Counted from the stretch's first letter, positions 15,808 to 64,000 are shown. The stretch: 64,000 nucleotides of DNA from IMGVR_UViG_3300043446_005562:124001-188000, one strand, 5' to 3'. Numbers and translations: made by a program. The notes: generated from the letters alone by a model not told the origin.

Positions 15808-16133
15808 TGAGCGAAAATAAAGAATTTACACCGTTATTCGAACGCGTCCTAATCAAACCAGACAGCGTTGAAACAAAAACAGAGACAGGCATCATTTTAC
15901 CAGTTGAATCACGTAAGCGCCCAAATACCGGCGTCGTTATTTCAATCGGACACCTGGTAGCCGAAAATTCAAAATGTCCAGTAAAAGTAGGGGATAGGGT
16001 TCTCTATCAACGCTATTCCGGACTAGACGTAAAAGTAAATGGTGATTTGCATCACTTAGTTATGGCCAATGATCTTGTTGGCATTATAAATAATACTGCA
16101 AACAGCACAATTGAAATTGCGGACTATGCTTAA
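15807..16133 (+). CDS. groES: Co-chaperonin GroES
   Basis: PLFERVLIKP, KTETGIILP mobile loop, GVVISIG, VKVGDRVLY. Confidence 0.92.
   Translation: MSENKEFTPLFERVLIKPDSVETKTETGIILPVESRKRPNTGVVISIGHLVAENSKCPVKVGDRVLYQRYSGLDVKVNGDLHHLVMANDLVGIINNTANSTIEIADYA
16085..16093 (+). promoter_or_regulatory. Late promoter TATAAATAA inside the groES 3' end
   Basis: Exact T4 late consensus 32 nt upstream of the ATG at 16126. Confidence 0.6.
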
Positions 16134-16704
16134 AAACTTCTCACAATTTATTACTGAAAAACGCGGCGGCACCAAACAGATCTTTTGTGATCTAGACGGT
16201 GTGCTAGTTGATTTCAATCGGGGTTTTAAAAACCTTGAAGCAAACGAGGATAAGTTGACCCCGGAAGAATACAACAAGAAGCACGGAAAACACTCAATAT
16301 GGAAAATAATCGATCCTGAGGGAGAAAAATTCTGGATCAAACTTAAATGGACAAAGGACGGTCGCGAACTATGGGATTACTTAAGTCGCTATAATCCAAT
16401 TATTCTGTCTTCACCAAGCCGTAGTAAGCACTCAATTCCAGGTAAAATGGAATGGGTAAAGCGTAACTTGGGCATAAGTCAAGCAAAGCCAACAACTTCT
16501 GCATCAGATTGGGATCCAGCTAGCCGAATTATCCTAAGTTCAGATAAATTCAAGTTTGCCAGGTCAAAGGACGATATCTTGATTGATGACACTCGTGCTA
16601 AATTAGACAAATGGACTGCTGCTGGCGGAACTGGCGTGTTTCATAATGATGCAACCGATACAATTCGGGTTCTTGAAGAAATATTCACAAGTAAAAAAGA
16701 CTAG
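16126..16704 (+). CDS. HAD-superfamily 5'(3')-nucleotidase-like protein with CTS-like leader
   Basis: FCDLDGVLVDF (motif I), ILSSP, GKMEW, ILIDD (motif IV); N-terminus MLKNFSQFITEK. Confidence 0.8.
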   Translation: MLKNFSQFITEKRGGTKQIFCDLDGVLVDFNRGFKNLEANEDKLTPEEYNKKHGKHSIWKIIDPEGEKFWIKLKWTKDGRELWDYLSRYNPIILSSPSRSKHSIPGKMEWVKRNLGISQAKPTTSASDWDPASRIILSSDKFKFARSKDDILIDDTRAKLDKWTAAGGTGVFHNDATDTIRVLEEIFTSKKD

Positions 16705-35053: not shown

Positions 35054-35413
35054 TTATTTAGGCATCTTTGCCATAGAAGGATCAACCTTCTTGTTAAGGG
35101 CTTTTCCTTTGATAACTAATTTAGAAATCTTTGGATCAACTTCTTTTTTAGAAGCAGTTCCGCGACCCTTTGGCAAATCAGCAATACCGGTTTTTACCAT
35201 TTTCTTAGGCTCAGAACCACGACCCTTTGGCAAATCTGCCATTTCAGGTTTAACAGTTTTGCTGATAGACTTGCCCTTTCCAGCAGGAAGGTCAGAAGTT
35301 TCATCATCAACTTGTTTGGTGATCTTTTTACCTTTAGCAGGAGCACCCTTAGAAAGATCTTGATTCATTTTCTTTTCGAAAAGATACTCTTCGTAGCTTA
35401 AAACTGATTTCAT
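35054..35413 (-). CDS. Lys-rich repeat protein with CTS-like leader; putative DNA-condensing internal protein
   Basis: MKSVLSYEEYLFEKK, then 19-aa repeats around DLP(K/A)G(R/K)G; late box at 35459-35467. Confidence 0.7.
   Translation of the reverse strand: MKSVLSYEEYLFEKKMNQDLSKGAPAKGKKITKQVDDETSDLPAGKGKSISKTVKPEMADLPKGRGSEPKKMVKTGIADLPKGRGTASKKEVDPKISKLVIKGKALNKKVDPSMAKMPK
35164..35300 (-). repeat. 57-bp period coding repeat (DLPKGRG units)
   Basis: GACCCTTTGGCAAATC at 35164 and 35221, with a diverged third copy near 35275. Confidence 0.75.
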
Positions 35414-35537: not shown

Positions 35538-37250
35538 TTAATATGCAGTTGAAGGAGCTACAGAACCTGTCAATACTCCTAGTCCTGTTACAGACATTGT
35601 GATGTATTGAGTTTCTGGGTGCCATCCTGCTTCTGTAATAGCATAACGAGATTTCATACCTAATTTTGGAGAGAAAGTACCCTCTGCGATAGTTTGAAGA
35701 CTCTCAGCCATGATATATGGAAGGAATTTAACACCTGGTTCTTCATCAGCACCTTTACGACCGATGTGGATACGGTTATCAGTGAACTTCAAGTTAGGAT
35801 CAACGTATACAGTTAGACCGTGTACTTTACCAGCTGGGTAAAGTTGGCCAGGACCTGAAGGAAGATCGTTATTGAATGGAGCGAAAGAATAACCAGCAAC
35901 ATCAGCAAGAGCTGAAGCTACACGACCGTTAGTAACGATGTATGTACCAGCACCGAAACGACCTCTGTGATAAATCAAGTTAGCCATTTCAAGGATTTTA
36001 GTAACAACACGACGTTGTAGAGTTGAGATGTTTTCGAAACCAGAACCTACAGTAAGATCTAAAGTAGTGATTCCTGAACCTTCAACTGAGTTAACGCTAG
36101 TTGCGTGAGTAGCACCTAAGTTCAATACTCTGTCAACTAATTTTTTGTTGATACCTTGTGCAAGTTCGTTAACCGCAACGTTTTCCAACATAGAGATTAC
36201 GTCGAAATTCCAAACACGGTTAAGATCTTGGATTTGCTCAACAGTTGCAGAGATTGCTACTTGGTCACCTTTTGCTTCGATGAACTTAGTGAACATACGA
36301 AGACCCATTTGACGGAATTTAGAAACTTCAGCAACTTCACGTTTCATACCGTCGAAGTTAACTTGCGAACCGTTTGAACCTAAGAAAGGACCATCGAATG
36401 CAGTTGAAGCATAGTCAGAATCGCTTACTGAAGTGAAACCTGAAATGTGATTTTCTAGAGCAGATACTAAAGTAGCTGTCATACCGTTAGCACCACCGAA
36501 ACCTTTCCAAGGTTCAGCTGAAGTACCAGCAGCAGAGTTACCTGTATCGGTACGTGAACCTGTGTAAGTAACGTTATCAAGAGCAGCAACTGCGTCAGCT
36601 ACAGTAGTAGTAGATGAATCAGTAGTACCACCTTGGATTACTTTTAGGATAGGTAAACCGTCGATACGAGATTTTCCAACGTATTGGAATTTGAAAGCAG
36701 CGCCAGTGTTACCAGTATCACCTTGGATATAGTCACCAATTGTAATACCTGCATTAAGAGCAGAAGACAATTTAACCATATAAGGTTCGTACTGAGTATC
36801 TAAGTTACCACCTTGGTATACGTAGTCCAAGTAAGGTAAGAAACCTACTGGAGAATCCATAGGAACTACACCAACTAGGTCGAAACCGATAGTTTTAGCA
36901 GCTACTTGGATAGCTACTGGAAGAAGGCTTGGGAATTTATCACCAGAACCAGATACAGAAGCACCGTAACCATTTTTTACACCAGCTGTGAATGGTGTCA
37001 TTGAGCTAGTTGGAGCAGAGATTGCACCAATTGAGCTGATAGAACCAGGTTGTTGTAAGAACAAACCAGGAGCTGAACCTGAAGCCAAAGCTTCGTTCAA
37101 TGAGCCTGCGTTATCGAAGATAGCGTGGTTGTGAGCGTAGTCAACTAACCAAGGGCGAGCTTTGATGTCTGCACCGTAACCTTCTAATACTGGAGCCCAA
37201 GTTTCAGTAACTGAAGCGTCATTCAGTCTTTTGAAAATTTTTGTTGCCAT
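35538..37250 (-). CDS. gp23: Major capsid protein (gp23-like)
   Basis: TWAPVLEG, IGFDLVGVVPM, TVEQIQDL, ELAQGINK, GRFGAGTYIV, FLPYI, TFSPKLGMKSRYA; SLNEA probable maturation site; strongly biased codons; TATAAATAA late box at 37389-37397. Confidence 0.93.
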   Translation of the reverse strand: MATKIFKRLNDASVTETWAPVLEGYGADIKARPWLVDYAHNHAIFDNAGSLNEALASGSAPGLFLQQPGSISSIGAISAPTSSMTPFTAGVKNGYGASVSGSGDKFPSLLPVAIQVAAKTIGFDLVGVVPMDSPVGFLPYLDYVYQGGNLDTQYEPYMVKLSSALNAGITIGDYIQGDTGNTGAAFKFQYVGKSRIDGLPILKVIQGGTTDSSTTTVADAVAALDNVTYTGSRTDTGNSAAGTSAEPWKGFGGANGMTATLVSALENHISGFTSVSDSDYASTAFDGPFLGSNGSQVNFDGMKREVAEVSKFRQMGLRMFTKFIEAKGDQVAISATVEQIQDLNRVWNFDVISMLENVAVNELAQGINKKLVDRVLNLGATHATSVNSVEGSGITTLDLTVGSGFENISTLQRRVVTKILEMANLIYHRGRFGAGTYIVTNGRVASALADVAGYSFAPFNNDLPSGPGQLYPAGKVHGLTVYVDPNLKFTDNRIHIGRKGADEEPGVKFLPYIMAESLQTIAEGTFSPKLGMKSRYAITEAGWHPETQYITMSVTGLGVLTGSVAPSTAY

Positions 37251-37267: not shown

Positions 37268-38545
37268 TTAATTTTGTGCTCTTCTTTTGAGAGCGTCTAA
37301 ATAGTTACTTGAGTAACCTCTTAGACTTTCGTGTACTTGTGTTAACGAAACATAGCCCTCTTTACCTTGGCTTTCGTTAATTGTTTGATTATTTATATTG
37401 TTTGCTTGCGCAATTCTTTCGCTGATTGCTCTAAGATCACGTGAATCCCAGAAAGCTTTTGCTTGGTAAGGAGTGTTGATCACTTGAGTAGAGGCCTGTG
37501 CCGCAATCCAGTTACGCTCATTATCTGTCATACCTTCAAACACTGATTTGTATTTTTCTGGCATGAAACGAACGTAGGCTGGGGTGTTTTCTACCTGTTT
37601 GTTCAATACTGCTTCCATGATATTGATAACTTCACCTTCAGTAAAGAAGATAGCGCCTTTCATCGTTTCAACGATTGCAGATTTAGTTTCAGTATCTAAA
37701 GCATAGAATTTTTGTTTATTAGATTCGCTAAGAAGTTTTAGGAATGGATACTTGTTCTCAAGAACAGCATTTGCTGAATTTGATTTAATGTGAGCAAGAA
37801 TTCCGTCAACTGCATTAGTTAATTCATCAACACCAGAGGCATCATTAACTTCGTAGCTTGCATTTTCATTAAGTTTCTTAACGTCAGCTAATAGTCTACG
37901 AGCTTTGATGTTGGTATTTGGAGTGATCTTTTCGTTCATTGTTTCAGCAATGTACTCAGAATAGGCAATACCTTTTTGTAAGTTTTCGCCTAAATACTCA
38001 GAATATTTAATAGCTGCATCAAGATTTTCAGCTAAGTAATTTGCAAATTTGATACCCTTTTCAGCATTTTCTGCAACGTATTCAGCGTATTGAATACCCT
38101 TGTCAACGTTTTGAGCTAGATAGTTTGAATAGGCAATATTCTTTTCAACGTTTTCAGCAATGTATTCGCCGTAATTGATGGATTGATTTACCTTTTCGCC
38201 TAAGTAGTCAGAGTATTGAATATTCTTCTCAATTTTTTCTGCTAAGTAATCGCCGTAATCGATCACGTTGTTTACCTTTTCAGCAACGTGTTCAGTATAA
38301 CCAATACCCTTATTCAACATGGTTGAAAGGTAATTAGAATACTCCACCATTTTTTCCATTTCACCAGCTAGGTAATTTACATACTCAACTAGTTTTCCAG
38401 TTTCTGGTGATTCGTTACTATTTTCGTTAAGAGCACGTAGACCAGCGTTATTTTTCGAAAGGTTTTCTTGAAGAGCGTCGAATTTCTTCTTTACCAATTG
38501 CGAATACTGGTTCATTTCTTCTCTTGATACAAAGTCATTAGCCAT
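37268..38545 (-). CDS. Nested in-frame scaffold/core protein (425 aa, starts MANDFVSREE)
   Basis: Internal late box AATAAATAA at 38583-38591 and an A-rich leader (AAACAACAAAATAACAATAAGCAA) precede the in-frame ATG (codon 236). Confidence 0.6.
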   Translation of the reverse strand: MANDFVSREEMNQYSQLVKKKFDALQENLSKNNAGLRALNENSNESPETGKLVEYVNYLAGEMEKMVEYSNYLSTMLNKGIGYTEHVAEKVNNVIDYGDYLAEKIEKNIQYSDYLGEKVNQSINYGEYIAENVEKNIAYSNYLAQNVDKGIQYAEYVAENAEKGIKFANYLAENLDAAIKYSEYLGENLQKGIAYSEYIAETMNEKITPNTNIKARRLLADVKKLNENASYEVNDASGVDELTNAVDGILAHIKSNSANAVLENKYPFLKLLSESNKQKFYALDTETKSAIVETMKGAIFFTEGEVINIMEAVLNKQVENTPAYVRFMPEKYKSVFEGMTDNERNWIAAQASTQVINTPYQAKAFWDSRDLRAISERIAQANNINNQTINESQGKEGYVSLTQVHESLRGYSSNYLDALKRRAQN

Positions 38546-39250
38546 TTGCTTATTGTTATTTTGTTGTTTAGGAATTTCAGAATTATTTATTCTATAGATC
38601 TTCACAGAATCTTCAAAAGAGAAGCTTTCTGATATATCTGTTAATTTATTTGTGATTGAAGCAGTCTTTAAAGTATCCAAAGACTCAAACAGAACTGAGA
38701 AATTGTCCTTAAGGCTTTCAGATACCTGAGTTAGGGATGCTTGCGAGAAACCAGGTTCAGCAACAATATCGTAGGTAAAGATTTTTTGAATCTTAACAAC
38801 ACCGCTCTCATTTACATTACCTGCAGCTCTTGATGAGGTTGAGATAGTACAGCCTGACTCAACTAGGGTCTTTGCAATACGACCGCATGGAGTATCAAGT
38901 ACTCTTAATTTGATACGAACAGTATTTGAAGGCTCGTCATAGTTAAGAGATTCAACCACGTGAGATACGTTCTTTAAGGAAACGTCAAAGCTTTGTGGAT
39001 GATCAAGCTCTCCAAATAACTGACCCTTTTTGATTTTTTCGTTTAGATAGGAAAGATGAGGCAAGTACTCTTGCTTCTCATAGATACGATTGTTTTCGTT
39101 CTTTTGTCCAAAGACTGCGCAAATACCTTCAAGGATAATTGAACCGTCATTTGATTTTGAAACATTTAATGCTTCATTAACTCGTTCAATGATGAATAAT
39201 TGACTTTCATCAAAGCCGGTCTTTAGTAAGTTTGTTTTAGCGCTAGTCAA
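37268..39250 (-). CDS. gp21: Prohead protease (gp21-like) fused to core/scaffold domain
   Basis: LEGICA, NENNRIY, GELDHP, NVSH, LDTPCG, STSSRAAG, TYDIVAEPGF; long helical repeat C-terminus; TTG start; late boxes at 39269-39277 and 39316-39324. Confidence 0.88.
   Translation of the reverse strand: MTSAKTNLLKTGFDESQLFIIERVNEALNVSKSNDGSIILEGICAVFGQKNENNRIYEKQEYLPHLSYLNEKIKKGQLFGELDHPQSFDVSLKNVSHVVESLNYDEPSNTVRIKLRVLDTPCGRIAKTLVESGCTISTSSRAAGNVNESGVVKIQKIFTYDIVAEPGFSQASLTQVSESLKDNFSVLFESLDTLKTASITNKLTDISESFSFEDSVKIYRINNSEIPKQQNNNKQMANDFVSREEMNQYSQLVKKKFDALQENLSKNNAGLRALNENSNESPETGKLVEYVNYLAGEMEKMVEYSNYLSTMLNKGIGYTEHVAEKVNNVIDYGDYLAEKIEKNIQYSDYLGEKVNQSINYGEYIAENVEKNIAYSNYLAQNVDKGIQYAEYVAENAEKGIKFANYLAENLDAAIKYSEYLGENLQKGIAYSEYIAETMNEKITPNTNIKARRLLADVKKLNENASYEVNDASGVDELTNAVDGILAHIKSNSANAVLENKYPFLKLLSESNKQKFYALDTETKSAIVETMKGAIFFTEGEVINIMEAVLNKQVENTPAYVRFMPEKYKSVFEGMTDNERNWIAAQASTQVINTPYQAKAFWDSRDLRAISERIAQANNINNQTINESQGKEGYVSLTQVHESLRGYSSNYLDALKRRAQN
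37934..38395 (-). repeat. Eleven tandem 14-aa repeats in the scaffold domain (K.I.Y..Y[LIV]AE...)
   Basis: KLVEYVNYLAGEME / KMVEYSNYLSTMLN / ... / KGIAYSEYIAETMN; 42-bp periodicity. Confidence 0.85.
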
Positions 39251-39315
39251 CTTTGTAAGACTTTTTTATTATTTATATAGCGATCTATCTGCTAAAATAG
39301 ATGGCTATACTAACA

Positions 39316-55031: not shown

Positions 55032-55637
55032 TTAAGCCGTTGCAAGATTCGATAAACCGGCCTTAGTCAATTGCTCCTTCCAAATTATTGGAAAATTCTT
55101 GTTCCACTCAGCAACTCGACCTTTTCTATCCAGCTTGTCGCTGTCATTTAAAACGGAATACATGTTCTTAAGAGCCGTAACTTCAAGATTGGTATCGCCG
55201 GCTGCTTGCATAGCGTTCATTTGTTCAAGCGAGTAGGCTTTTTTCCAACCCAGTTTTGCGTGAAGTTCTAATGCATCTTCCACCGAATCTAAAATCATTC
55301 TGCCGAACATTTTTTTACCTGGATTATTTGGATCATTGCTCACAACCGGCTGAGCCGCTTGACTAGGCATAATCTTTTTAAGAGCCGCTTGCATTGAGGC
55401 CTGATCTTTACTAGCGCCGGTGTCGGTAACGGATCCCTCAGTTGCGTCCCAATAGGCATACATGCTGTGTGCTTTATCATCAGCGAATGGATACTTATAG
55501 GCAACTCCATTTGATTTTAGAGTGTAACCCTCAGGTTTTGCGCCCGGACCAGAAGTGCCGGCTGTTGCTGCTGGATTTGTTGGTGCGGCCGCTGCTTCCT
55601 CGTTCAACCACTGTGTATAACCTTTAATAATTTTCAT
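55032..55637 (-). CDS. Hypothetical late protein with CTS-like leader
   Basis: MKIIKGYTQWLNEE followed by an Ala/Pro linker; late box at 55661-55669. Confidence 0.65.
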   Translation of the reverse strand: MKIIKGYTQWLNEEAAAAPTNPAATAGTSGPGAKPEGYTLKSNGVAYKYPFADDKAHSMYAYWDATEGSVTDTGASKDQASMQAALKKIMPSQAAQPVVSNDPNNPGKKMFGRMILDSVEDALELHAKLGWKKAYSLEQMNAMQAAGDTNLEVTALKNMYSVLNDSDKLDRKGRVAEWNKNFPIIWKEQLTKAGLSNLATA

Positions 55638-58804: not shown

Positions 58805-59227
58805 TTACTTTTGTTGTAATAGATATTGAGTTTTATTGCTTAGGTCTAGAATCTCATCTACTAGATTATAGAGTTCAGAATCATCGTCCTTATCAAAGAT
58901 TTGTCTGAATGTTCCGCGTAGAGCGTCATTCACCAAGTCAAAGAAAACTGGCATTGCCATTTCATAATCATAGATCATGACAGCGGCTTCACCAAATTTA
59001 AGGTGTTGTGAACCGTATTTACCCGCGATTGCCTCAACCAGGGTGTCCATTTGATCAATGAAACCCTCATAGAACATGCCGAAATGACGATGTTCAGTAT
59101 CTAGGCCTGTTTGCCAGTGAATTATTTTTGCCTGATCGGCAATCTGCATTAACGAAAGCATGAAATAGCTGATTGTTGCTTTTTCTTGCATTTCTTGAGG
59201 TTCGGTTAAATCTTCCATTCCAAACAT
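58805..59227 (-). CDS. Ferritin/Dps-like four-helix bundle protein
   Basis: IIHWQT...EHRHFG.FYE..IDQMDTLVE..AGKYG...NLVDEIL...KTQYLL. Confidence 0.72.
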   Translation of the reverse strand: MFGMEDLTEPQEMQEKATISYFMLSLMQIADQAKIIHWQTGLDTEHRHFGMFYEGFIDQMDTLVEAIAGKYGSQHLKFGEAAVMIYDYEMAMPVFFDLVNDALRGTFRQIFDKDDDSELYNLVDEILDLSNKTQYLLQQK

Positions 59228-59475: not shown

Positions 59476-62430
59476 TTACTTTATAACTATGCTAAAACGA
59501 TTGTGATTTTGCGGATCTGGCCAGTCCGGCCCGCCTGTACAGCGTAAATGCTTCTGGAATTCCTCAAAGCCCGAATCAACTTTAAAATAGGCAATTTTTG
59601 AGGTTTCTTTATCAACCACCATAAGTATCTTGAAGTCATCAACCTTTGCATAATACAGAAGAGAATGCCAGGCTAAAAAATCAATAAAATTTTGATACTC
59701 AATTTTTGTAGGAGTGTCGTTTTGAAAAAAATCCGAGATTCCTTTGCGCAAATTAGCTTTATGGCCGCAACCTTTTTCCCAAATTCCACCTGAAAAAATT
59801 TCTGAAAACCATTCAAAAAAGTCGTCCGGTTTTAGAGCAGACTCCTCAGAAATAATCTTGAAAAGAGGTTTCCATGTGTTAAGAAATCCTTTCTGTCTAA
59901 TATTGAACGCATTTAAACCATCTTTTGCAAAGCATTGATCCAAGAAGTTACTGACTTTCTGATTATTATTGACAAGACCGGCGAGTTCCGCTAATTTTGT
60001 TTCTATTATAAACTTACCGTTTGTAAAACCACCCTGCTTCGACGATACCAATCTTCCGCCGTTTCCTTTAACCTCAATGTTAATTTCACCAGCCGCAATA
60101 TCTCCTTCTCCAGATTTCTTCACACCATCTTGAAATAATATTGAAATCAATTCGCCAATACCTTTACCCTGAGTAGTTCCGGATTTAGTTGTTATCGAAA
60201 AATTTAGGATCTCACTAAATATCGTTGGATCAATTTCAGGAAAATCGGATTCATCTAATTTTCCTGAATTCTTCAGTCCTGAAATGTCATAACCACTAGA
60301 TTTTTCAATGTAGTCATACAGCTTATCTAGAGTCGGTTCGTGTCCGTGTGAAACCTCTGCGCATATTTGACTAAAACGATCAGCGTCAGTTTTTAGATAT
60401 CCACGATTTACAATTTCAGTGGATATGTTGTTCAACACCCCTGATGATTTATGAGTTGCAATAGATCTTTTGATTTGAGCTATTATTTTTTTGTAATCTT
60501 CTGGCGAGGATTGCCTTAGCGCAGCTAATTCTTGTTCAAACTCATCATCCATATTTAGAGGTGGAACCTCATTTGCGAATGTTGCCTCAACTGATTCATT
60601 TAATTTTGGCGAGGCCAACTCATTGATGTCTCGATTCATGTTAAAAAATTCGGAATGAATCGCGCCGGGAGCAGCCGCTTTGAAATTCTGATAGTCTTCG
60701 GATCTTAGAGAATTCATAATGGAATCCTTGACCCCAGCGATCGGTAATTCAATTAGAGCAACGTCATTTCTAAAATTAAGATTTCTTGAGCGTCTTTTTG
60801 CCAATTCCATCTGTAGTGCCAGATCCTTTATTCTACTCTTTGTACCTGAGATGATTACTGGTTCAAAATCCGGCTTTATTGCTCTTAATAGATTTTCAAC
60901 CTCGCCGTCCGGTACCATTCGATGACCGGTAACAAAACTTGGATGGTGGGTTGCTACTTTGTCCAAATAGCCCTTAACCGTTTCTTTTTTAAAGGGTTTC
61001 GTCTTGTTTACGGAGCCGTCGTGAATGCACACAAATAGGCATGGGAAACCATTCATATCAAACAGTTTCTGTGCGGATTTAAGATGACCTGGGTGAAATG
61101 GTTGAAAATCTGAAATGATTAGATTAACTCTTTTAGACTTTCTTTCCTCTTCTGGCACCTCCGCGAAAGTTTCAAAATAGCCGGGTTCAAGATCCTCTCC
61201 AACAAATTCACCAAATGTTGGAAAGTAATTTTCGTAAACCGCATCGCCTAATAACACATTACTAATCTTTTCAATTTGAGAAACAAGATTCGCGCGCATT
61301 GGCTTGGTAAAAAATGTTGAGCTCACCCTAATTGTCTTTTTTCTAAACATGTTCAAAAAGACACGATAGATCTCCTTGTAATTTGGGTTTGACTCAATTA
61401 GGTTTGTGACCTTTTTATTATGAATTAGGTTGTAATTAACGTTAAAGTCTTCTCTTTGTAAAAATTCTGGAATTTGAATGTCCAAATCAATGTACTTCTC
61501 TCCAAACTCAGCAATGAAATCAAGATAGATATGATTCACCAATGAGATATAGCGTTGCTCATAAGAATCGCCGCTTAGTTTAATATCACGTAATTCGCTT
61601 AATGAATATCTCTCAATGAAATTCATCAAGTCAATCACAATGATCCAAATGTAATCGTCCGATTTCTTTTGAACACGGTCCTGTGCCTTTTGTTTTGCGT
61701 TTGCCTGAAATACTGGATCAACCAACTTTGCCAAAAAGACAGAGTCTTCGGATTTATTTGCAGGATCGTAGAATCTAAATACTAGACCCTCAATGTCTTT
61801 GTCCAGCGTATCGCGTAAAAAAGTTGTTCCAAGCTCAGGATTTAGAACTGATACAATATATTTTGTGAATGATGTTGTCTTAAATTTATCAACCAATTCC
61901 TCAAACGGAGTATAGATGAACTCTTGAATTTTCTCCTTTTGATCTGGCGACAATTTGCCCTCAAATACAATCGGAGGTCTCTCAATCATGAGCAGGTCGG
62001 CCCATTTGTCAAGGGTCGCCTTGTCCTGAATGGTCTCTTTCATTTCGCCCTTATCATCAAGCACATGAATGTAGCTTAGGATAAGTCCATTTTTGGGCAA
62101 TCGGTCGTAGGCAATGGTCTGGGCTTTTGGGCTGGTAAACCATTCCATGCCAAAATGATAGTTTTCTGGAATCTGGGCTATGGTATCAGCCCCAAGGTTC
62201 TCAAAATGTCTAATAGCCGGTTCAAAGTAACGACTGAGTACTCGATCGATGTACGTAATTTCAGCGTTCCTTTTAAAGAAGCGGAACTTACTCGTATTAG
62301 GATCTTTTTGGGCGCCAAAGAAGGCCCCATCCATTTTTTCATTTACAATTACAGTTTTGTTTAAAAGGCCATCTAAGAAGTCCTTTCCGCGTTTGTCATA
62401 AACGTCTCTTAAGTGTGATAGTCCTGGCAT
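59476..62430 (-). CDS. Three-domain protein: ATP-dependent (RNA) ligase-like + HxGH nucleotidyltransferase-like + PD-(D/E)xK nuclease-like
   Basis: EKMDG (K32), GMEWF, DIEGLVFR and LAKLVD ligase motifs; FQPFHPGH at about aa 446; GKGIGE...GEGDI...IEVKG in the C-terminal third. Confidence 0.7.
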   Translation of the reverse strand: MPGLSHLRDVYDKRGKDFLDGLLNKTVIVNEKMDGAFFGAQKDPNTSKFRFFKRNAEITYIDRVLSRYFEPAIRHFENLGADTIAQIPENYHFGMEWFTSPKAQTIAYDRLPKNGLILSYIHVLDDKGEMKETIQDKATLDKWADLLMIERPPIVFEGKLSPDQKEKIQEFIYTPFEELVDKFKTTSFTKYIVSVLNPELGTTFLRDTLDKDIEGLVFRFYDPANKSEDSVFLAKLVDPVFQANAKQKAQDRVQKKSDDYIWIIVIDLMNFIERYSLSELRDIKLSGDSYEQRYISLVNHIYLDFIAEFGEKYIDLDIQIPEFLQREDFNVNYNLIHNKKVTNLIESNPNYKEIYRVFLNMFRKKTIRVSSTFFTKPMRANLVSQIEKISNVLLGDAVYENYFPTFGEFVGEDLEPGYFETFAEVPEEERKSKRVNLIISDFQPFHPGHLKSAQKLFDMNGFPCLFVCIHDGSVNKTKPFKKETVKGYLDKVATHHPSFVTGHRMVPDGEVENLLRAIKPDFEPVIISGTKSRIKDLALQMELAKRRSRNLNFRNDVALIELPIAGVKDSIMNSLRSEDYQNFKAAAPGAIHSEFFNMNRDINELASPKLNESVEATFANEVPPLNMDDEFEQELAALRQSSPEDYKKIIAQIKRSIATHKSSGVLNNISTEIVNRGYLKTDADRFSQICAEVSHGHEPTLDKLYDYIEKSSGYDISGLKNSGKLDESDFPEIDPTIFSEILNFSITTKSGTTQGKGIGELISILFQDGVKKSGEGDIAAGEINIEVKGNGGRLVSSKQGGFTNGKFIIETKLAELAGLVNNNQKVSNFLDQCFAKDGLNAFNIRQKGFLNTWKPLFKIISEESALKPDDFFEWFSEIFSGGIWEKGCGHKANLRKGISDFFQNDTPTKIEYQNFIDFLAWHSLLYYAKVDDFKILMVVDKETSKIAYFKVDSGFEEFQKHLRCTGGPDWPDPQNHNRFSIVIK

Positions 62431-62435
62431 AGTAT

Positions 62436-63023
62436 TTAGTCTAGTGAACCGAAATCGCCTCTGCTCATAGCTGCGGCAAATTCTCTATCGGCTTTTGAAT
62501 CTTTAGCGATATTAAGCCCGATAACGCGCTCGGCAATTTCCGGATTTTGTTTTAAAAATTTAATTAGGGCTCCTGTATCAATGTCCTGGTATTCTCCAGA
62601 TCCACCAAATTCAACAAGCTCTTTTTCTAACCTAAACATTGGCGATCTATTAGTCAGCTCAAGGTGCCAAATGCTAAACGTTATGATTTGACCGTTGCGC
62701 TCCATGTGATCGGCCATATCTGTCAAATCTTTGACTACGTCAGCTAACGCGTATTCCTTGTCCATTGCCCTGTCCCATTCGTTCCATTGCTTTCCATCAA
62801 CCTTTATGTTGATTGGAGTAGATGCGTTGGAGAATCCGGGCACCAATACAGTTTCCAGATTTGGGCACAGTTCAAATATTTCAGCCAGATCCACTGCAAA
62901 ATCCTCAATAGTTTCGCCCCTTAGACCGTGATCAGGTAGAAGACCCTTTGCTTTTAACCAGGCTCTGCGCTGTCTGTGAGCTGATTCGGCTATAAATTCG
63001 GTGAATCCTTTAAGATTTTTCAT
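62436..63023 (-). CDS. Hypothetical late protein with near-perfect T4-type capsid targeting sequence
   Basis: MKNLKGFTEFIAES compared with T4 MKTYQEFIAE; late box at 63040-63048. Confidence 0.7.
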   Translation of the reverse strand: MKNLKGFTEFIAESAHRQRRAWLKAKGLLPDHGLRGETIEDFAVDLAEIFELCPNLETVLVPGFSNASTPINIKVDGKQWNEWDRAMDKEYALADVVKDLTDMADHMERNGQIITFSIWHLELTNRSPMFRLEKELVEFGGSGEYQDIDTGALIKFLKQNPEIAERVIGLNIAKDSKADREFAAAMSRGDFGSLD

Positions 63024-63039
63024 GCAAGACACTTTCTTG

Positions 63040-63648
63040 TTATTTATTAGGCTCGATGCCTAAAAGTCTGTAACACTCAGCATTAAAGCTCTGGGCTGAT
63101 GCTGAATCAAAATGATTGAATGAAATGCTTAGGCCGTTATTTGAGCTTGAATTTGCAAGCCAGGTATTGCCAATATCCAATAGATGTGCCATGGTCGACT
63201 GTTCTTCTTGGGTTGAATGAGCTCCATCCCAAGTGTCCTTGGCTCTAGCTGAATCGCCGGTTTGGCCTGCAACCGATACGACCAGAGTTTTGCAATTTTT
63301 AAATAGATCAGAACTTAAGAGCGAAAAGTACTCTAACTCGGCTTTAGTTTTAGACAATCTGCCTCTAAGAATTGCCCATGTGTATGCTGAAACAATCGCT
63401 CGATCAAATATCCAAATCTTATCTTTGTATTCGGGCCGCTGATTCATTTCCATAATGGTCATGATGTTGCCAAGGCTAAAGTAGTGTAGGCTCGGACTCT
63501 TTTCATCGGAGACCATATCAAGAGTCTTGATGTGATTTGCGAAATAGAACTTGTAATACTCTAACCTTGGATCAGAGCACTCTTTTAAAAAGTTATTGAT
63601 TAAAAATGTTTTGCCCGAGTGTCTTGGGCCCTCAATGAATAATATCAT
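63040..63648 (-). CDS. P-loop deoxynucleoside monophosphate (thymidylate-like) kinase
   Basis: ILFIEGPRHSGKT; IFDRAIVSAY (DR..S motif of dTMP kinases). Confidence 0.75.
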   Translation of the reverse strand: MILFIEGPRHSGKTFLINNFLKECSDPRLEYYKFYFANHIKTLDMVSDEKSPSLHYFSLGNIMTIMEMNQRPEYKDKIWIFDRAIVSAYTWAILRGRLSKTKAELEYFSLLSSDLFKNCKTLVVSVAGQTGDSARAKDTWDGAHSTQEEQSTMAHLLDIGNTWLANSSSNNGLSISFNHFDSASAQSFNAECYRLLGIEPNK

Positions 63649-63998
63649 ACAATTCTAAGACGATCGGTCTCAGCAAATTCTTCAAGTGAACGCGCTGTAT
63701 CCCAATCAATTTTAATTATTTTACTCTTATCTACGAAAATAAAGTCGATATCGATGTTCAAGCCGGCGTCTAGGAACCAGGCTGTGTACTTTATGATCTC
63801 ATACAGGGAATCCTCAAAGATTGTAATTGAGGTGGCTTCATTTTGCCGAATCAAATCAATCGCTAATTCAGCCTTTTCGCCTTCCCGGCCCAAAAAGAAG
63901 GTTTTTTCAAATCTAATCTTGTGCTCGGCCAACAGCTCAATCACCCTTGGCTGACAAGCTTTCACTCGATGGGTTATCAAGTAGTTTAGGGCGTCATC
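63645..63998 (-). CDS. HAD-superfamily phosphatase (5'-partial)
   Basis: YLITHR (motif II), K, ITIFEDS (motif IV); frame is open to the window edge. Confidence 0.65.
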   Translation of the reverse strand, partial: DDALNYLITHRVKACQPRVIELLAEHKIRFEKTFFLGREGEKAELAIDLIRQNEATSITIFEDSLYEIIKYTAWFLDAGLNIDIDFIFVDKSKIIKIDWDTARSLEEFAETDRLRIV

Positions 63999-64000
63999 TT

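What the first reader, a model, noticed from the sequence alone, without database searches (positions are those of the whole stretch)
59476..62430. 984-aa ligase / nucleotidyltransferase / nuclease fusion that looks like a protease-processed, virion-packaged polyprotein
Seen in sequence: an N-terminal ligase-family adenylation domain (EKMDG, GMEWF, DIEGLVFR, LAKLVD), a middle HxGH domain (FQPFHPGH) and a C-terminal PD-(D/E)xK-like domain (GE...GDI...IEVK). The first junction carries a CTS-like motif (FPTFGEFVGE, aa 403-412). The second junction carries gp21-type sites (KLNES at aa 609-613, FANE). The gene lies 5 nt behind a CTS gene under the late box at 63040. Inference: it is packaged, cut into separate enzymes in the head, and injected. 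Possible roles are repair of host-cleaved RNA/tRNA, NAD or nucleotide metabolism, or degradation of unmodified host DNA. The HxGH domain deviates from consensus (SD instead of GR before FQP), so its activity is uncertain.
Basis: partly seen in the sequence, partly recalled or inferred. Interest (0 to 1): 0.75.

Follow-up and report, generated by a model that had tools for sequence, protein, structure and literature searches.

The report
Phage ligase–NTase–nuclease fusion enzyme
A 252-kb uncultured jumbo phage encodes a 984-residue protein that joins an RNA ligase, an NMN-adenylyltransferase-like enzyme and a previously unnamed restriction-nuclease-like module; it most likely processes and reseals broken nucleic-acid ends during infection, and whether it is also packed into the virion remains open.

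Summary
Three modules are supported. (1) aa 1-395 is an Rnl2-like RNA ligase: Pfam PF09414 above cutoff, Foldseek to T4 Rnl2 E 7e-8, and motif-I Lys32 kept in 116/118 relatives. (2) aa 425-606 is an HxGH nucleotidyltransferase closest to archaeal NMNAT (TM 0.71), with a clade-wide S(D/E) in place of GR. (3) aa 640-984 belongs to a Pfam-less family of at least 165 clusters with invariant G.GE…GD…ExK; the model has pLDDT 94 and only weak matches to restriction enzymes (HhaI Z 4.7). The ligase-NTase core exists alone (about 602-626 aa) in most relatives. The nuclease-like module is fused, encoded by the adjacent gene, or absent, so the modules cooperate and need no cleavage to work. The phage has two canonical RNA-repair pairs elsewhere, so this is a third, specialised ligase. 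The packaging idea is not shown but has some basis: an S77 prohead protease, 13 T4-CTS-like leaders, a late-like promoter class, and a CTS-like motif at junction 1. Against it, the would-be P1 Glu412 is not conserved and the protein's own N-terminus has no CTS. Verdict: a new variant of phage nucleic-acid repair enzymes.

The parts
59476..62430 (-). Whole gene, 984 aa: ligase, NTase and nuclease-like modules
   Evidence: Single ORF; 286 homologues, full-length ones at 56-76% identity
61711..62430 (-). aa 1-240: RNA ligase adenylyltransferase domain (motif I E31-K32-M-D-G35; III F93-G-M-E96; IV E214-G-L-V-F-R219-F; V A234-K235..D238)
   Evidence: Pfam PF09414 31.4 bits vs cutoff 27 and 35.3 bits; PHROG 548; Foldseek T4 Rnl2 E 7e-8; motif conservation; K32 aligns with T4 Rnl2 K35
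61246..61710 (-). aa 241-395: all-helical C-terminal domain of the ligase module
   Evidence: DSSP of core model; Foldseek alignments to full-length T4 Rnl2 span 350-371 columns; megaphage relatives align over aa 1-365/373 only
61159..61245 (-). aa 396-424: junction 1, near-invariant aromatic motif ENYFP(T/S)FxEF(V/I)G...PGYFE in a low-confidence linker
   Evidence: pLDDT <50 at 396-409 and 413-424; E400, F403, P404, F406, E408, F409, G411, G417 120/120 but position 412 variable; the motif ends a stand-alone ligase and starts a stand-alone NTase
60613..61158 (-). aa 425-606: HxGH (HIGH-superfamily) nucleotidyltransferase, NMNAT-like; S440-D441-FQPFHPGH449; basic motif K545-R-R-S-R-N-L-N552
   Evidence: Foldseek Mth/Mj NMNAT TM 0.71, rmsd 3.5; profile vs PDB NMNAT E 5e-4; PF01467 only 14.8-17.5 bits here but 35-37 bits in distant relatives
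60514..60612 (-). aa 607-639: junction 2, acidic linker with conserved (L/V/I)-(N/T)-E612-(S/A/N); the point where short relatives end and where the gene is split in others
   Evidence: pLDDT <50 at 608-615; conservation 99/101; short forms end here; split genes in L010 and L011
59479..60513 (-). aa 640-984: restriction-endonuclease-like (PD-(D/E)xK-type) module of an unnamed phage family
   Evidence: AF2 pLDDT 94.3, pTM 0.91; 165 clusters at E<=1e-3; no Pfam family; weak structural matches to HhaI, MspI, PvuII, HinP1I and others
60076..60171 (-). aa 754-785: putative active site G754-x-G-E757 ... G773-D774 ... E783-V-K785
   Evidence: Invariant in about 145 family members; D774 precedes and E783/K785 lie on a beta-hairpin of the model
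62436..63023 (-). Upstream 195-aa gene with T4-CTS-like leader MKNLKGFTEFIAE|S; variable or absent in relatives
   Evidence: relatives have 139-228-aa genes or none at this position; T4 IPII/IPIII leaders verified
63041..63048 (-). AATAAATA, member of the genome's [A/G/T]ATAAATA promoter-like class, 17 nt before the ATG of the CTS-leader gene
63040..63648 (-). 202-aa P-loop kinase-fold protein (GPRHSGKT), syntenic with the ligase gene in close relatives
   Evidence: ESM Atlas neighbours are Thymidylate_kin/AAA_28/dNK; PDB profile best is deoxynucleoside kinase, E 0.036; only the P-loop aligns with T4 Pnkp
63645..64000 (-). 176-aa DxDxT (FDFDETL) HAD-like protein; its start lies beyond the window end (window-equivalent 64175)
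   Evidence: no Pfam or PDB sequence match; only the DxDxT motif aligns with T4 Pnkp
37268..39250 (-). S77 (T4 gp21-type) prohead protease, the enzyme the cleavage hypothesis depends on
   Evidence: PF03420 37.3 bits; PHROG 207 E 4e-38; TATAAATA 20 nt upstream

Best explanation
The gene encodes a three-module enzyme that works on broken or unusual nucleic-acid ends inside the infected cell. Module 1 (aa 1-395) is an Rnl2-type ATP-dependent polynucleotide ligase that becomes adenylylated on Lys32 and seals a 3'-OH/5'-phosphate break. Module 2 (aa 425-606) is an NMNAT-like HxGH nucleotidyltransferase that transfers AMP from ATP to a 5'-phosphorylated acceptor. The acceptor is unknown: it could be NMN or a related mononucleotide, or possibly a polynucleotide 5'-phosphate end. 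Module 3 (aa 640-984) is a metal-dependent PD-(D/E)xK-type nuclease that makes or trims the ends. The ligase-NTase pair is the conserved functional core, and the nuclease-like module is a fast-evolving accessory that can be fused, encoded next door, or absent. The protein probably acts uncleaved or as a loosely tethered assembly, and it is transcribed from a late-type promoter together with the upstream CTS-leader gene. Shown here: the domain identities, conservation of the catalytic motifs, the fusion/split/absence pattern, and the existence of separate canonical RNA-repair cassettes in the same genome. Inferred: the substrates (RNA is favoured because the ligase is of RNA-ligase type), the direction of the NTase reaction, actual nuclease activity, and the timing of expression.
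For: Ligase: PF09414 above cutoff, PHROG 548, Foldseek T4 Rnl2, Trl1-LIG, REL1, Rnl3 and Rnl1 with probability 1.00, and K32 in 116/118 relatives. NTase: NMNAT TM 0.71, profile E 5e-4 with FQP-HxGH and PF motifs aligned, and (H/T)xGH kept. Nuclease-like module: invariant E/D/ExK, a confident model, and restriction enzymes recurring among the weak hits. Functional linkage: the tri-domain architecture recurs in five distant 50%-identity clusters. Split versions exist with the core gene overlapping the module gene (L011, 27% identity, E 8e-49), with an NTase-ending gene followed by a module gene (L010), and with a ligase-only gene followed by a module gene (L016). Other stand-alone modules abut a HAD gene and a Pol-beta-type NTase gene, all enzyme types typical of RNA-repair systems (PMC7824862). 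The core alone is the commonest form, and two 100%-complete relatives lack the module. Strong conservation of all three modules argues for active enzymes.
Against: No biochemical data exist and the phage is uncultured. The ligase is so diverged that its profile finds no solved ligase by sequence, and hhalign to T4 Rnl2 is weak. Motif V appears to have only one lysine (K235), so step-1 chemistry may be atypical (sequence reading, not structurally verified). The NTase lacks the GR arginine and the SGTxxR motif of NMNATs. The nuclease fold match is below the level that proves homology (best Z 4.7). The neighbouring P-loop and HAD genes could not be tied to polynucleotide end-healing. The phage already has Rnl1+AAA_33 and Rnl5-like+cREC pairs, so ordinary tRNA repair may not be this protein's job. 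Its position beside replication genes leaves a DNA or RNA-DNA hybrid substrate possible.
Confidence: 0.55

Rival explanations
1. One reading: the protein is made late, targeted to the prohead, cut by the S77 protease at the two junctions into separate ligase, NTase and nuclease enzymes, and injected with the DNA to act at the start of the next infection. This concerns where and when the enzymes act and is compatible with the same enzymatic activities.
For: S77 protease present. Thirteen N-terminal T4-CTS-like leaders against 0.45 expected, all ending (I/V/L)-x-(E/D); T4 IPII/IPIII MKTYQEFIAE fits the same pattern. A late-like promoter class precedes 51/280 ORFs and 8/13 leader genes (p 4.5e-4), including the gene 5 nt upstream of the target. 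Junction 1 carries a CTS-like F-x-E-F-(V/I) motif in a low-pLDDT linker. In L011 a stand-alone NMNAT-like protein begins MNYIKTFSDFIFEN, and in L017 a Pol-beta-type NTase next to a module begins MLKFKDFVNE, so related enzymes do carry such leaders. Junction 2 keeps (L/V/I)-x-E-(S/A/N) in 99/101 sequences.
Against: The target's own N-terminus (MPGLSHLRDVYD...) has no leader, and I know of no internal CTS in T4-type phages (own knowledge). Residue 412 is E 49, D 45, T 19, Q 4, N 2, G 1. The junction-1 motif is the extreme C-terminus of a stand-alone ligase in L016, which fits a docking or tail motif better than a cleavage site. 602-aa relatives end before junction 2. Split or absent modules show cleavage is not needed. 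There are 15 (L/I)xE sites in the protein. No hallmark of packaged polyvalent proteins is present. The gene is next to replication genes.
Confidence: 0.2
2. The conserved core is mainly an NAD+/nucleotide-salvage device. The P-loop neighbour phosphorylates a nucleoside such as nicotinamide riboside, the NMNAT-like domain makes the dinucleotide to counter NAD-depleting defence, and the ligase domain is auxiliary or uses the product.
For: NMNAT is the nearest solved relative by structure and by sequence. The P-loop neighbour resembles nucleoside/nucleotide kinases, including AAA_28, rather than Pnkp. Phage NadR-type systems pair a HIGH NTase with a P-loop kinase (PMC7824862 and PMC9503650). The genome has a second, canonical HAD-NMNAT-like fusion.
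Against: No NAMPT/NadV in the genome. The window clade has replaced the ATP-contacting GR with S(D/E) and lacks SGTxxR, whereas the paralogue keeps both. The NTase is inseparable from an RNA ligase across deep divergence. The HAD and kinase neighbours are not conserved in distant relatives. This model does not explain the nuclease-like partner.
Confidence: 0.12
3. It acts on DNA or RNA-DNA hybrids at the replication fork or on host DNA. The restriction-like module nicks or degrades DNA, and the Rnl2-like ligase seals nicks with an RNA 3'-OH, for example in primer processing or repair.
For: The closest structural hits of the C-terminal module are DNA restriction and homing endonucleases. T4 Rnl2, the best ligase match, is known to seal nicks in duplexes (own knowledge). 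The gene neighbours PolB, primase-like and UvsW-like helicase genes.
Against: All structural matches of the module are weak, and PD-(D/E)xK enzymes also cut RNA. The module's other gene neighbours (NTases, HAD, RNA ligase) point to RNA-end chemistry. No DNA-binding or clamp-binding element was established.
Confidence: 0.1

Closest known systems
T4 RNA ligase 2 (gp24.1, Rnl2 family; PF09414)
   Same: Best structural match over both the adenylyltransferase and the helical C-terminal domains (E 7e-8). Motif I lysine aligned (K32 with K35). Pfam family above cutoff.
   Different: Very low sequence similarity (hhalign probability 1.5%; no PDB ligase found by profile). Motif V seems to have a single lysine. 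Ends in a conserved aromatic F-x-E-F motif. Fused to two further enzymes.
Archaeal NMN adenylyltransferase (M. jannaschii / M. thermautotrophicus NMNAT; NadM/NadR HIGH-superfamily NTases)
   Same: Rossmann-like fold at TM 0.71, rmsd 3.5 A. FQP(F/I)HxGH and downstream PF motif align.
   Different: GR before FQP is S(D/E) in 119/120 relatives. No SGTxxR motif. A new invariant basic motif KKRSRNLN. No NadV partner. Always linked to an RNA ligase.
Monomeric type II restriction endonucleases HhaI / HinP1I / MspI (PD-(D/E)xK superfamily)
   Same: E...D...ExK signature, and the best though weak structural matches (HhaI Z 4.7 over 136 residues).
   Different: No significant sequence or Foldseek match. 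Extra helical N- and C-terminal parts. A phage-specific family of at least 165 clusters, mostly stand-alone proteins of 330-420 aa. Substrate unknown.
T4 Pnkp + Rnl1 tRNA repair, and jumbo-phage RNA-repair cassettes (PMC7824862)
   Same: A phage ligase associated with nucleotidyltransferases and phosphatase/kinase-fold neighbours. The same genome has canonical Rnl1+AAA_33 and Rnl5-like+cREC pairs.
   Different: The target's partners are an HxGH NTase and a PD-(D/E)xK-like module, a combination I did not find in the papers read. Its P-loop and HAD neighbours share only the P-loop and DxDxT motifs with T4 Pnkp.
T4 internal proteins IPI-III and Alt (CTS-targeted, gp21-processed, injected)
   Same: The genome has the protease, CTS-like leaders and late-type promoters. 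The gene directly upstream is of this kind.
   Different: The target has no N-terminal CTS. Its CTS-like motif is internal, and the cleavage-site Glu is not conserved.

Membership tests
ATP-dependent RNA ligase, Rnl2-like (PF09414, covalent nucleotidyltransferase superfamily) | Profile match above the curated threshold | tested here: met
   31.4 bits vs 27; 35.3 bits in the six-frame search; PHROG 548 E 6e-7
ATP-dependent RNA ligase, Rnl2-like (PF09414, covalent nucleotidyltransferase superfamily) | Motif I lysine nucleophile (KxDG) present and conserved | tested here: met
   E31-K32-M-D-G35; K in 116/118 relatives; aligns with T4 Rnl2 EK35IHG
ATP-dependent RNA ligase, Rnl2-like (PF09414, covalent nucleotidyltransferase superfamily) | Fold of adenylyltransferase domain plus Rnl2-type helical C-domain | tested here: met
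   Foldseek 2hvq/2hvr E 7-9e-8, probability 1.00, 350-371 aligned columns; model pLDDT 78.9
ATP-dependent RNA ligase, Rnl2-like (PF09414, covalent nucleotidyltransferase superfamily) | Motif V with two lysines (KxK) | tested here: inconclusive
   Only K235 is seen in L-A-K-L-V-D-P, invariant in 120/120; no residue-level structural superposition was available
ATP-dependent RNA ligase, Rnl2-like (PF09414, covalent nucleotidyltransferase superfamily) | Self-adenylylation and strand-joining activity | not testable with these tools
   Needs purified protein
NMN adenylyltransferase (HIGH/HxGH nucleotidyltransferases, PF01467) | (H/T)xGH signature | tested here: met
   H446-P-G-H449; H 100 / T 19 at position 446, H 117/120 at 449
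NMN adenylyltransferase (HIGH/HxGH nucleotidyltransferases, PF01467) | Profile match above the curated threshold | tested here: not met
   14.8 and 17.5 bits vs cutoff 21; distant relatives of the same domain reach 35-37 bits
NMN adenylyltransferase (HIGH/HxGH nucleotidyltransferases, PF01467) | Fold match to a solved NMNAT | tested here: met
   1m8f, 1m8k, 1f9a, 4yp6: TM by target 0.71-0.72, rmsd 3.5-3.6
NMN adenylyltransferase (HIGH/HxGH nucleotidyltransferases, PF01467) | Arg of the GRxQP motif and the SGTxxR ATP-binding motif | tested here: not met
   S440-(D/E)441 in 119/120; no SGTxxR, whereas the paralogue L008 and L011_up3 have both
NMN adenylyltransferase (HIGH/HxGH nucleotidyltransferases, PF01467) | Accompanying NMN supply (NadV/NAMPT) in the genome | tested here: not met
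   PF04095 finds nothing in the 93%-complete genome
PD-(D/E)xK nuclease superfamily | Conserved acidic/lysine signature E ... (P/G)D ... (D/E)xK | tested here: met
   E757 144/144, D774 145/145, E783 142/145 (3 D), K785 144/144
PD-(D/E)xK nuclease superfamily | Signature residues on the canonical beta-hairpin of the core fold | tested here: inconclusive
   By DSSP, D774 precedes strand 139-141 and E783/K785 lie on strand 144-150 of the model. Best matches are HhaI Z 4.7, MspI 3.4, PvuII 3.3, HinP1I 3.2 and Hjc 3.0, all below a convincing level; Foldseek best E 0.35
PD-(D/E)xK nuclease superfamily | Match to a curated nuclease family profile | tested here: not met
   None of 87 members matches a nuclease Pfam family
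T4-type CTS-targeted, gp21-processed head proteins | gp21-type (S77) prohead protease in the genome | tested here: met
T4-type CTS-targeted, gp21-processed head proteins | N-terminal capsid-targeting sequence on the protein itself | tested here: not met
   N-terminus MPGLSHLRDVYDKRG... has no motif; the only CTS-like hits are internal, at aa 302 and 406
T4-type CTS-targeted, gp21-processed head proteins | Conserved (L/I)-x-E cleavage site at the proposed junctions | tested here: inconclusive
   Junction 1: P1 is Glu in 49/120. Junction 2: (L/V/I/M)-x-E in 99/101. The motif occurs 15 times in the protein
T4-type CTS-targeted, gp21-processed head proteins | Presence of processed fragments in virions | not testable with these tools
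   Uncultured phage; no proteomic data
T4 Pnkp-Rnl1-type healing-and-sealing cassette | Adjacent polynucleotide kinase/phosphatase homologous to Pnkp | tested here: not met
   hhalign to T4 Pnkp aligns only the P-loop (22 columns, probability 20%) and DxDxT (probability 3%); the canonical AAA_33 kinase+Rnl1 pair lies about 35 kb away
Polyvalent proteins (Iyer et al. 2017, PMC5512222) | Hub domains such as MuF, portal fusion, zincin peptidase or ArdC-N | tested here: not met
   Pfam finds only the ligase and NTase domains; hallmarks as described

The most novel reading that the evidence does not exclude
The NMNAT-like domain does not make free NAD+. It acts on polynucleotide 5'-phosphate ends, forming or reversing A(5')pp(5')N-type linkages (pre-adenylylated RNA, or NAD-like caps). 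The fused ligase and the nuclease-like module then use or create those ends. That would make this the first HIGH-superfamily enzyme shown to nucleotidylate RNA ends after transcription, and possibly one delivered in the capsid with other CTS-tagged nucleotide enzymes.
Probability: 0.1. Interest if true: 0.9.

Novelty: new variant of a known kind. Interest (0 to 1): 0.6.

Why it matters
RNA ligases are the core of phage counter-defence against host nucleases that cut tRNA and mRNA, yet the natural role of Rnl2-type ligases is still unclear. This work shows an Rnl2-like ligase obligatorily coupled to an NMNAT-like nucleotidyltransferase. The coupling holds in hundreds of environmental jumbo-phage sequences, in fused form and as adjacent genes. 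A large, unnamed family of restriction-nuclease-like proteins is an optional third partner. That gives a concrete, testable enzyme trio and names a new protein family with a confident model and a clear candidate active site. The same genome also shows that T4-style capsid-targeting leaders sit on many proteins behind a late-type promoter, and in related phages on nucleotide enzymes. This makes the question of whether phages inject repair enzymes directly testable by virion proteomics.

Tried and rejected
(1) Pnkp-like reading of the upstream P-loop and DxDxT genes: no Pfam, NCBIfam or PHROG hit. tblastn against annotated phages was empty or weak. The PDB profile search gave only deoxynucleoside kinase at E 0.036, or nothing. 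hhalign to T4 Pnkp matched only the P-loop and DxDxT. This is left as 'kinase-fold and HAD-like, substrate unknown'.

(2) C-terminal domains swapped for unrelated ones: rejected. An HMM of the module finds it in all long relatives except P0041, only much more diverged than the core.

(3) DXO/Rai1-type decapping nuclease: these score only Z about 2, below the restriction enzymes.

(4) Polyvalent protein: no hallmark domains.

(5) Search for close stand-alone relatives of the NTase part: only 8 hits, all on 1-3 kb contigs and probably fragments.

(6) The ligase profile against PDB sequences found no ligase.

I removed the row and did not send it elsewhere.

(8) Whole-record searches through loci L003/L005 were not possible. 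I replaced them with IMG/VR relatives.

(9) TATAAATA itself is not enriched in the window (4 found, 4 expected). Only the relaxed [A/G/T]ATAAATA class, analysed by position relative to genes, is informative.

(10) One literature query was malformed, and one returned nothing.

Full report
OBSERVATION. The window is bases 124001-188000 of a 252,618-bp viral record rated 93% complete. The reported ORF is real: 59476..62430 on the minus strand, 984 aa, no interruptions. The gene starts 5 nt after the stop of an upstream 195-aa gene whose likely N-terminus is MKNLKGFTEFIAES. The 'late box' is AATAAATA at 63041-63048 (-), one mismatch from TATAAATA and overlapping the stop codon of the preceding P-loop gene.

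WHAT KIND OF PHAGE. The only matches among deposited phage genomes are huge uncultured phages at 24-28% identity. The window holds a major head protein (35538-37250) and an S77/gp21-type prohead protease (37268-39250). The target lies about 20 kb from that head module. Just past the window edge, and in relatives, it lies next to PolB, primase-like and UvsW-like helicase genes.

MODULE 1, LIGASE (aa 1-395).
- Pfam RNA_ligase PF09414 scores 31.4 bits against a cutoff of 27 over aa 26-235, and 35.3 bits in the genome search. PHROG 548 'RNA ligase' also matches.
- The AlphaFold model of aa 1-615 (41-sequence alignment, mean pLDDT 78.9) matches full-length T4 Rnl2 best (E 7-9e-8), followed by fungal Trl1 ligase domains, T. 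brucei REL1, archaeal Rnl3 and T4 Rnl1.
- In 120 relatives, motif I K32 is kept in 116 of 118. V217-F-R-F220 and A234-K235..D238-P239 are invariant.
- hhalign to T4 Rnl2 is statistically weak but places E31-K32 on E34-K35. A profile of the module finds no solved ligase by sequence alone, so this is a very diverged branch.
- Motif V shows a single lysine. This could bear on step-1 chemistry, but I could not verify it structurally.

MODULE 2, NUCLEOTIDYLTRANSFERASE (aa 425-606).
- Pfam CTP_transf_like is below threshold here (14.8-17.5 bits against 21). The same domain in distant relatives scores 35-37 bits.
- Structurally the nearest solved proteins are archaeal NMN adenylyltransferases (TM 0.71-0.72, rmsd 3.5 A), ahead of PPAT, NadD and NadM.
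- A family profile hits Mj and Mth NMNAT at E 5e-4, aligning 'vsdFQPihkgH' with 'IGRFQPFHKGH' and the downstream PF motif.
Distant tri-domain relatives and stand-alone phage NTases keep GRFQPF. A new invariant basic motif, K-(K/R)-R-S-R-N-L-N at 545-552, is present.
- This degree of conservation argues for an active enzyme with an altered substrate or mechanism, not a decaying domain.
- The genome has no NAMPT. It does have a second, canonical NMNAT-like domain fused to a HAD domain in a 473-aa protein about 15 kb away.

MODULE 3, NUCLEASE-LIKE (aa 640-984).
- A profile search of 1.84 billion representatives found 165 clusters, mostly stand-alone proteins of 330-420 aa. None matches a nuclease Pfam family.
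- G754, E757, G773-D774, E783 and K785 are invariant or nearly so across about 145 members.
- The model is excellent (pLDDT 94.3, pTM 0.91). D774 precedes and E783/K785 lie on a beta-hairpin.
- Foldseek finds nothing significant in the PDB (best E 0.35). The independent aligner gives at best Z 4.8. Restriction and homing endonucleases and a resolvase recur: HhaI 4.7, MspI 3.4, PvuII 3.3, HinP1I 3.2, NhoI 3.1, entry 3ndh 3.1, I-Ssp6803I 3.0 and Hjc 3.0. DXO/Rai1 score only about 2. AlphaFold DB gives three uncharacterised relatives.
- I read this as a probable but unproven PD-(D/E)xK nuclease of a new family.

HOW THE MODULES RELATE.
- Most relatives are 602-626 aa and stop just after the NTase. 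Identity over aa 1-603 is 50-76%.
- Long relatives keep the same third module, but so diverged that BLAST loses it (HMM E 1e-25 to 1e-39). Short forms lack it.
- Two 100%-complete 270-kb relatives have no copy anywhere.
- Among module-family representatives, the only recognisable fusion partner is the NTase, with or without the ligase. Five distant clusters have the full tri-domain architecture.
- Split arrangements exist. In L011 a 621-aa core homologue (27% identity, E 8e-49) overlaps by 4 nt the start of a stand-alone module gene. In L010 a gene ending in the NTase domain precedes the module closest to the window's. In L016 a 420-aa ligase-only gene abuts a module gene.
- Other stand-alone modules abut a HAD gene fragment (L015) and a protein with a Pol-beta-NTase-like GDIDIAV motif, identified by my reading of that motif only (L017).
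- So the three activities cooperate. The ligase-NTase pair is the conserved core, the nuclease-like module is an accessory evolving faster, and physical separation by proteolysis is not required for function.

CONTEXT IN THE GENOME.
- In close relatives the order is: DxDxT protein (about 178 aa), then P-loop protein (202 aa), then an optional variable gene, then the ligase gene.
- I could not connect the two upstream genes to polynucleotide end-healing. The P-loop protein looks like nucleoside/nucleotide kinases. Both share only signature motifs with T4 Pnkp.
- This synteny is not kept in distant relatives.
- The genome has two canonical RNA-repair pairs elsewhere: an Rnl1-type ligase (PF09511, E 2e-21) directly downstream of an AAA_33 kinase, and an OB-fold Rnl5-like ligase next to a cREC cyclic-phosphate-processing domain. 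These are the standard jumbo-phage RNA-repair components described in PMC7824862.
- The target is therefore a third, specialised ligase, not the phage's ordinary tRNA repair enzyme.

THE PACKAGING HYPOTHESIS.
- The motif [FYW]x[EQD][FYW][ILVM]x[ED] occurs 28 times in 280 ORFs against 4.2 expected. Thirteen copies lie within the first 25 residues against 0.45 expected.
- T4 IPIII and IPII, read from the T4 record, begin MKTYQEFIAE, which fits the same pattern.
- [A/G/T]ATAAATA precedes 51 of 280 ORFs, mostly 19-25 nt before the ATG. These include very large, presumably structural, genes and 8 of the 13 leader genes (Fisher p 4.5e-4). TATAAATA lies 20 nt upstream of the protease gene. The target is thus probably co-transcribed with a CTS-leader gene from a late-type promoter.
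- Junction 1 (aa 396-424) is the one long low-confidence stretch in the core model, yet it is almost invariant: E400, F403, P404, F406, E408, F409, G411 and G417 are 120/120. That is the behaviour of a short linear motif.
- In L011 a stand-alone NMNAT-like protein begins MNYIKTFSDFIFEN followed by GRFQPFHNGH, so the same motif sits where junction 1 sits.

Against cleavage and packaging:
- Residue 412 is Glu in only 49 of 120 relatives.
- The motif is also the extreme C-terminus of the ligase-only protein of L016, which ends ...TFKQFITK.
- The target's own N-terminus has no leader.
- 602-aa relatives end before junction 2.
- (L/I)xE occurs 15 times in the protein.
- None of the hub domains of packaged 'polyvalent proteins' is present.
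- Junction 2 does keep (L/V/I)-x-E-(S/A/N) in 99 of 101 sequences, but it is also simply the domain boundary where genes split.
I put packaging and processing at about 0.2. It is compatible with the enzymatic reading rather than opposed to it.

COMPARISON AND NOVELTY. It works like a ligase-centred nucleic-acid repair enzyme. The ligase passes the membership tests for the Rnl2/PF09414 family, apart from an unresolved motif V. The middle domain is a HIGH-superfamily NTase with NMNAT as its nearest relative, but it fails two NMNAT-defining features, so I do not file it as an NMNAT. The third module has the PD-(D/E)xK signature but no convincing fold or profile match. I found no description of a ligase-HIGH-NTase fusion in the papers retrieved. 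A review notes that no post-transcriptional NAD-capping enzyme is known and names NMNATs only as speculative candidates (PMC8131947), which frames the most novel reading. I classify the finding as a new variant of a known kind, containing a new protein family.

LIMITS. There is no experimental data and the phage is uncultured. Structure jobs were capped at two, so the full-length arrangement and residue-level superpositions were not done. Substrates, reaction direction, expression timing and virion content are all inferences.

Noticed in passing
Whole genome G000; in the window e.g. 16126-16704 (+), 35054-35413 (-), 55032-55637 (-), 62436-63023 (-): Thirteen proteins carry an N-terminal T4-CTS-like leader (MK..F(S/T)(Q/E)F(I/V)xE) against 0.45 expected, and many more have looser versions. 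They are candidates for packaged or injected internal proteins. The one at 16126 looks like a HAD (DxDGV) nucleotidase.
   Followed up: partly
Genome-wide; window copies at 16085-16092 (+), 39270-39277 (-), 63041-63048 (-), and about 59417 (-): [A/G/T]ATAAATA is a strongly positioned upstream element. 54 of 76 copies lie within 60 nt of a same-strand ORF start, mostly 19-25 nt before the ATG. It resembles the T4 late promoter and is associated with leader genes and large structural-looking genes.
   Followed up: partly
L008:1114-2535 (-), about 15 kb beyond the window end: A 473-aa fusion of a HAD-like domain (IFDLDDTL) with a canonical NMNAT-like domain (GKFKPPHLGH, GVSGTLMR): a second HIGH-NTase in the genome, paired with a phosphatase fold.
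   Followed up: partly
L022:1003-2544 (-) and L024:1117-2613 (-), genome about 217-223 kb: Two canonical RNA-repair pairs: an OB-fold (PHA02142) Rnl5-like ligase next to a cREC_REC domain protein, and an Rnl1-type ligase directly downstream of an AAA_33 kinase. A PA14/GLEYA-domain protein lies next to the latter.
   Followed up: partly
62436-63023 (-) and the same position in L003, L005 and the P0044 contig: The gene between the P-loop gene and the ligase gene is hypervariable (195, 139 or 228 aa, or absent), reminiscent of the polymorphic internal-protein loci of T4-like phages.
   Followed up: partly
Relatives P0060-P0120 (alignment A5, columns 700-790): Short-form core proteins end in an acidic tail of about 20 residues with a conserved C-terminal (E/T)PII(Q/E)IE(D/S). 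It may be a docking peptide. It is replaced by the nuclease-like module in the window's clade.
   Followed up: no
58805-59227 (-): A DUF5856 / PHROG 858 protein just downstream of the target. T4's rI.-1 carries the same 'starvation-inducible transcriptional regulator' annotation in the T4 record.
   Followed up: no
63040-63048 (-) and the ends of the P-loop genes in L003 and L005: All three aligned P-loop proteins end in ...NK. In the window's gene the codons AAT-AAA-TAA are themselves the AATAAATA(A) promoter-like element, so the coding sequence and the signal may constrain each other.
   Followed up: no
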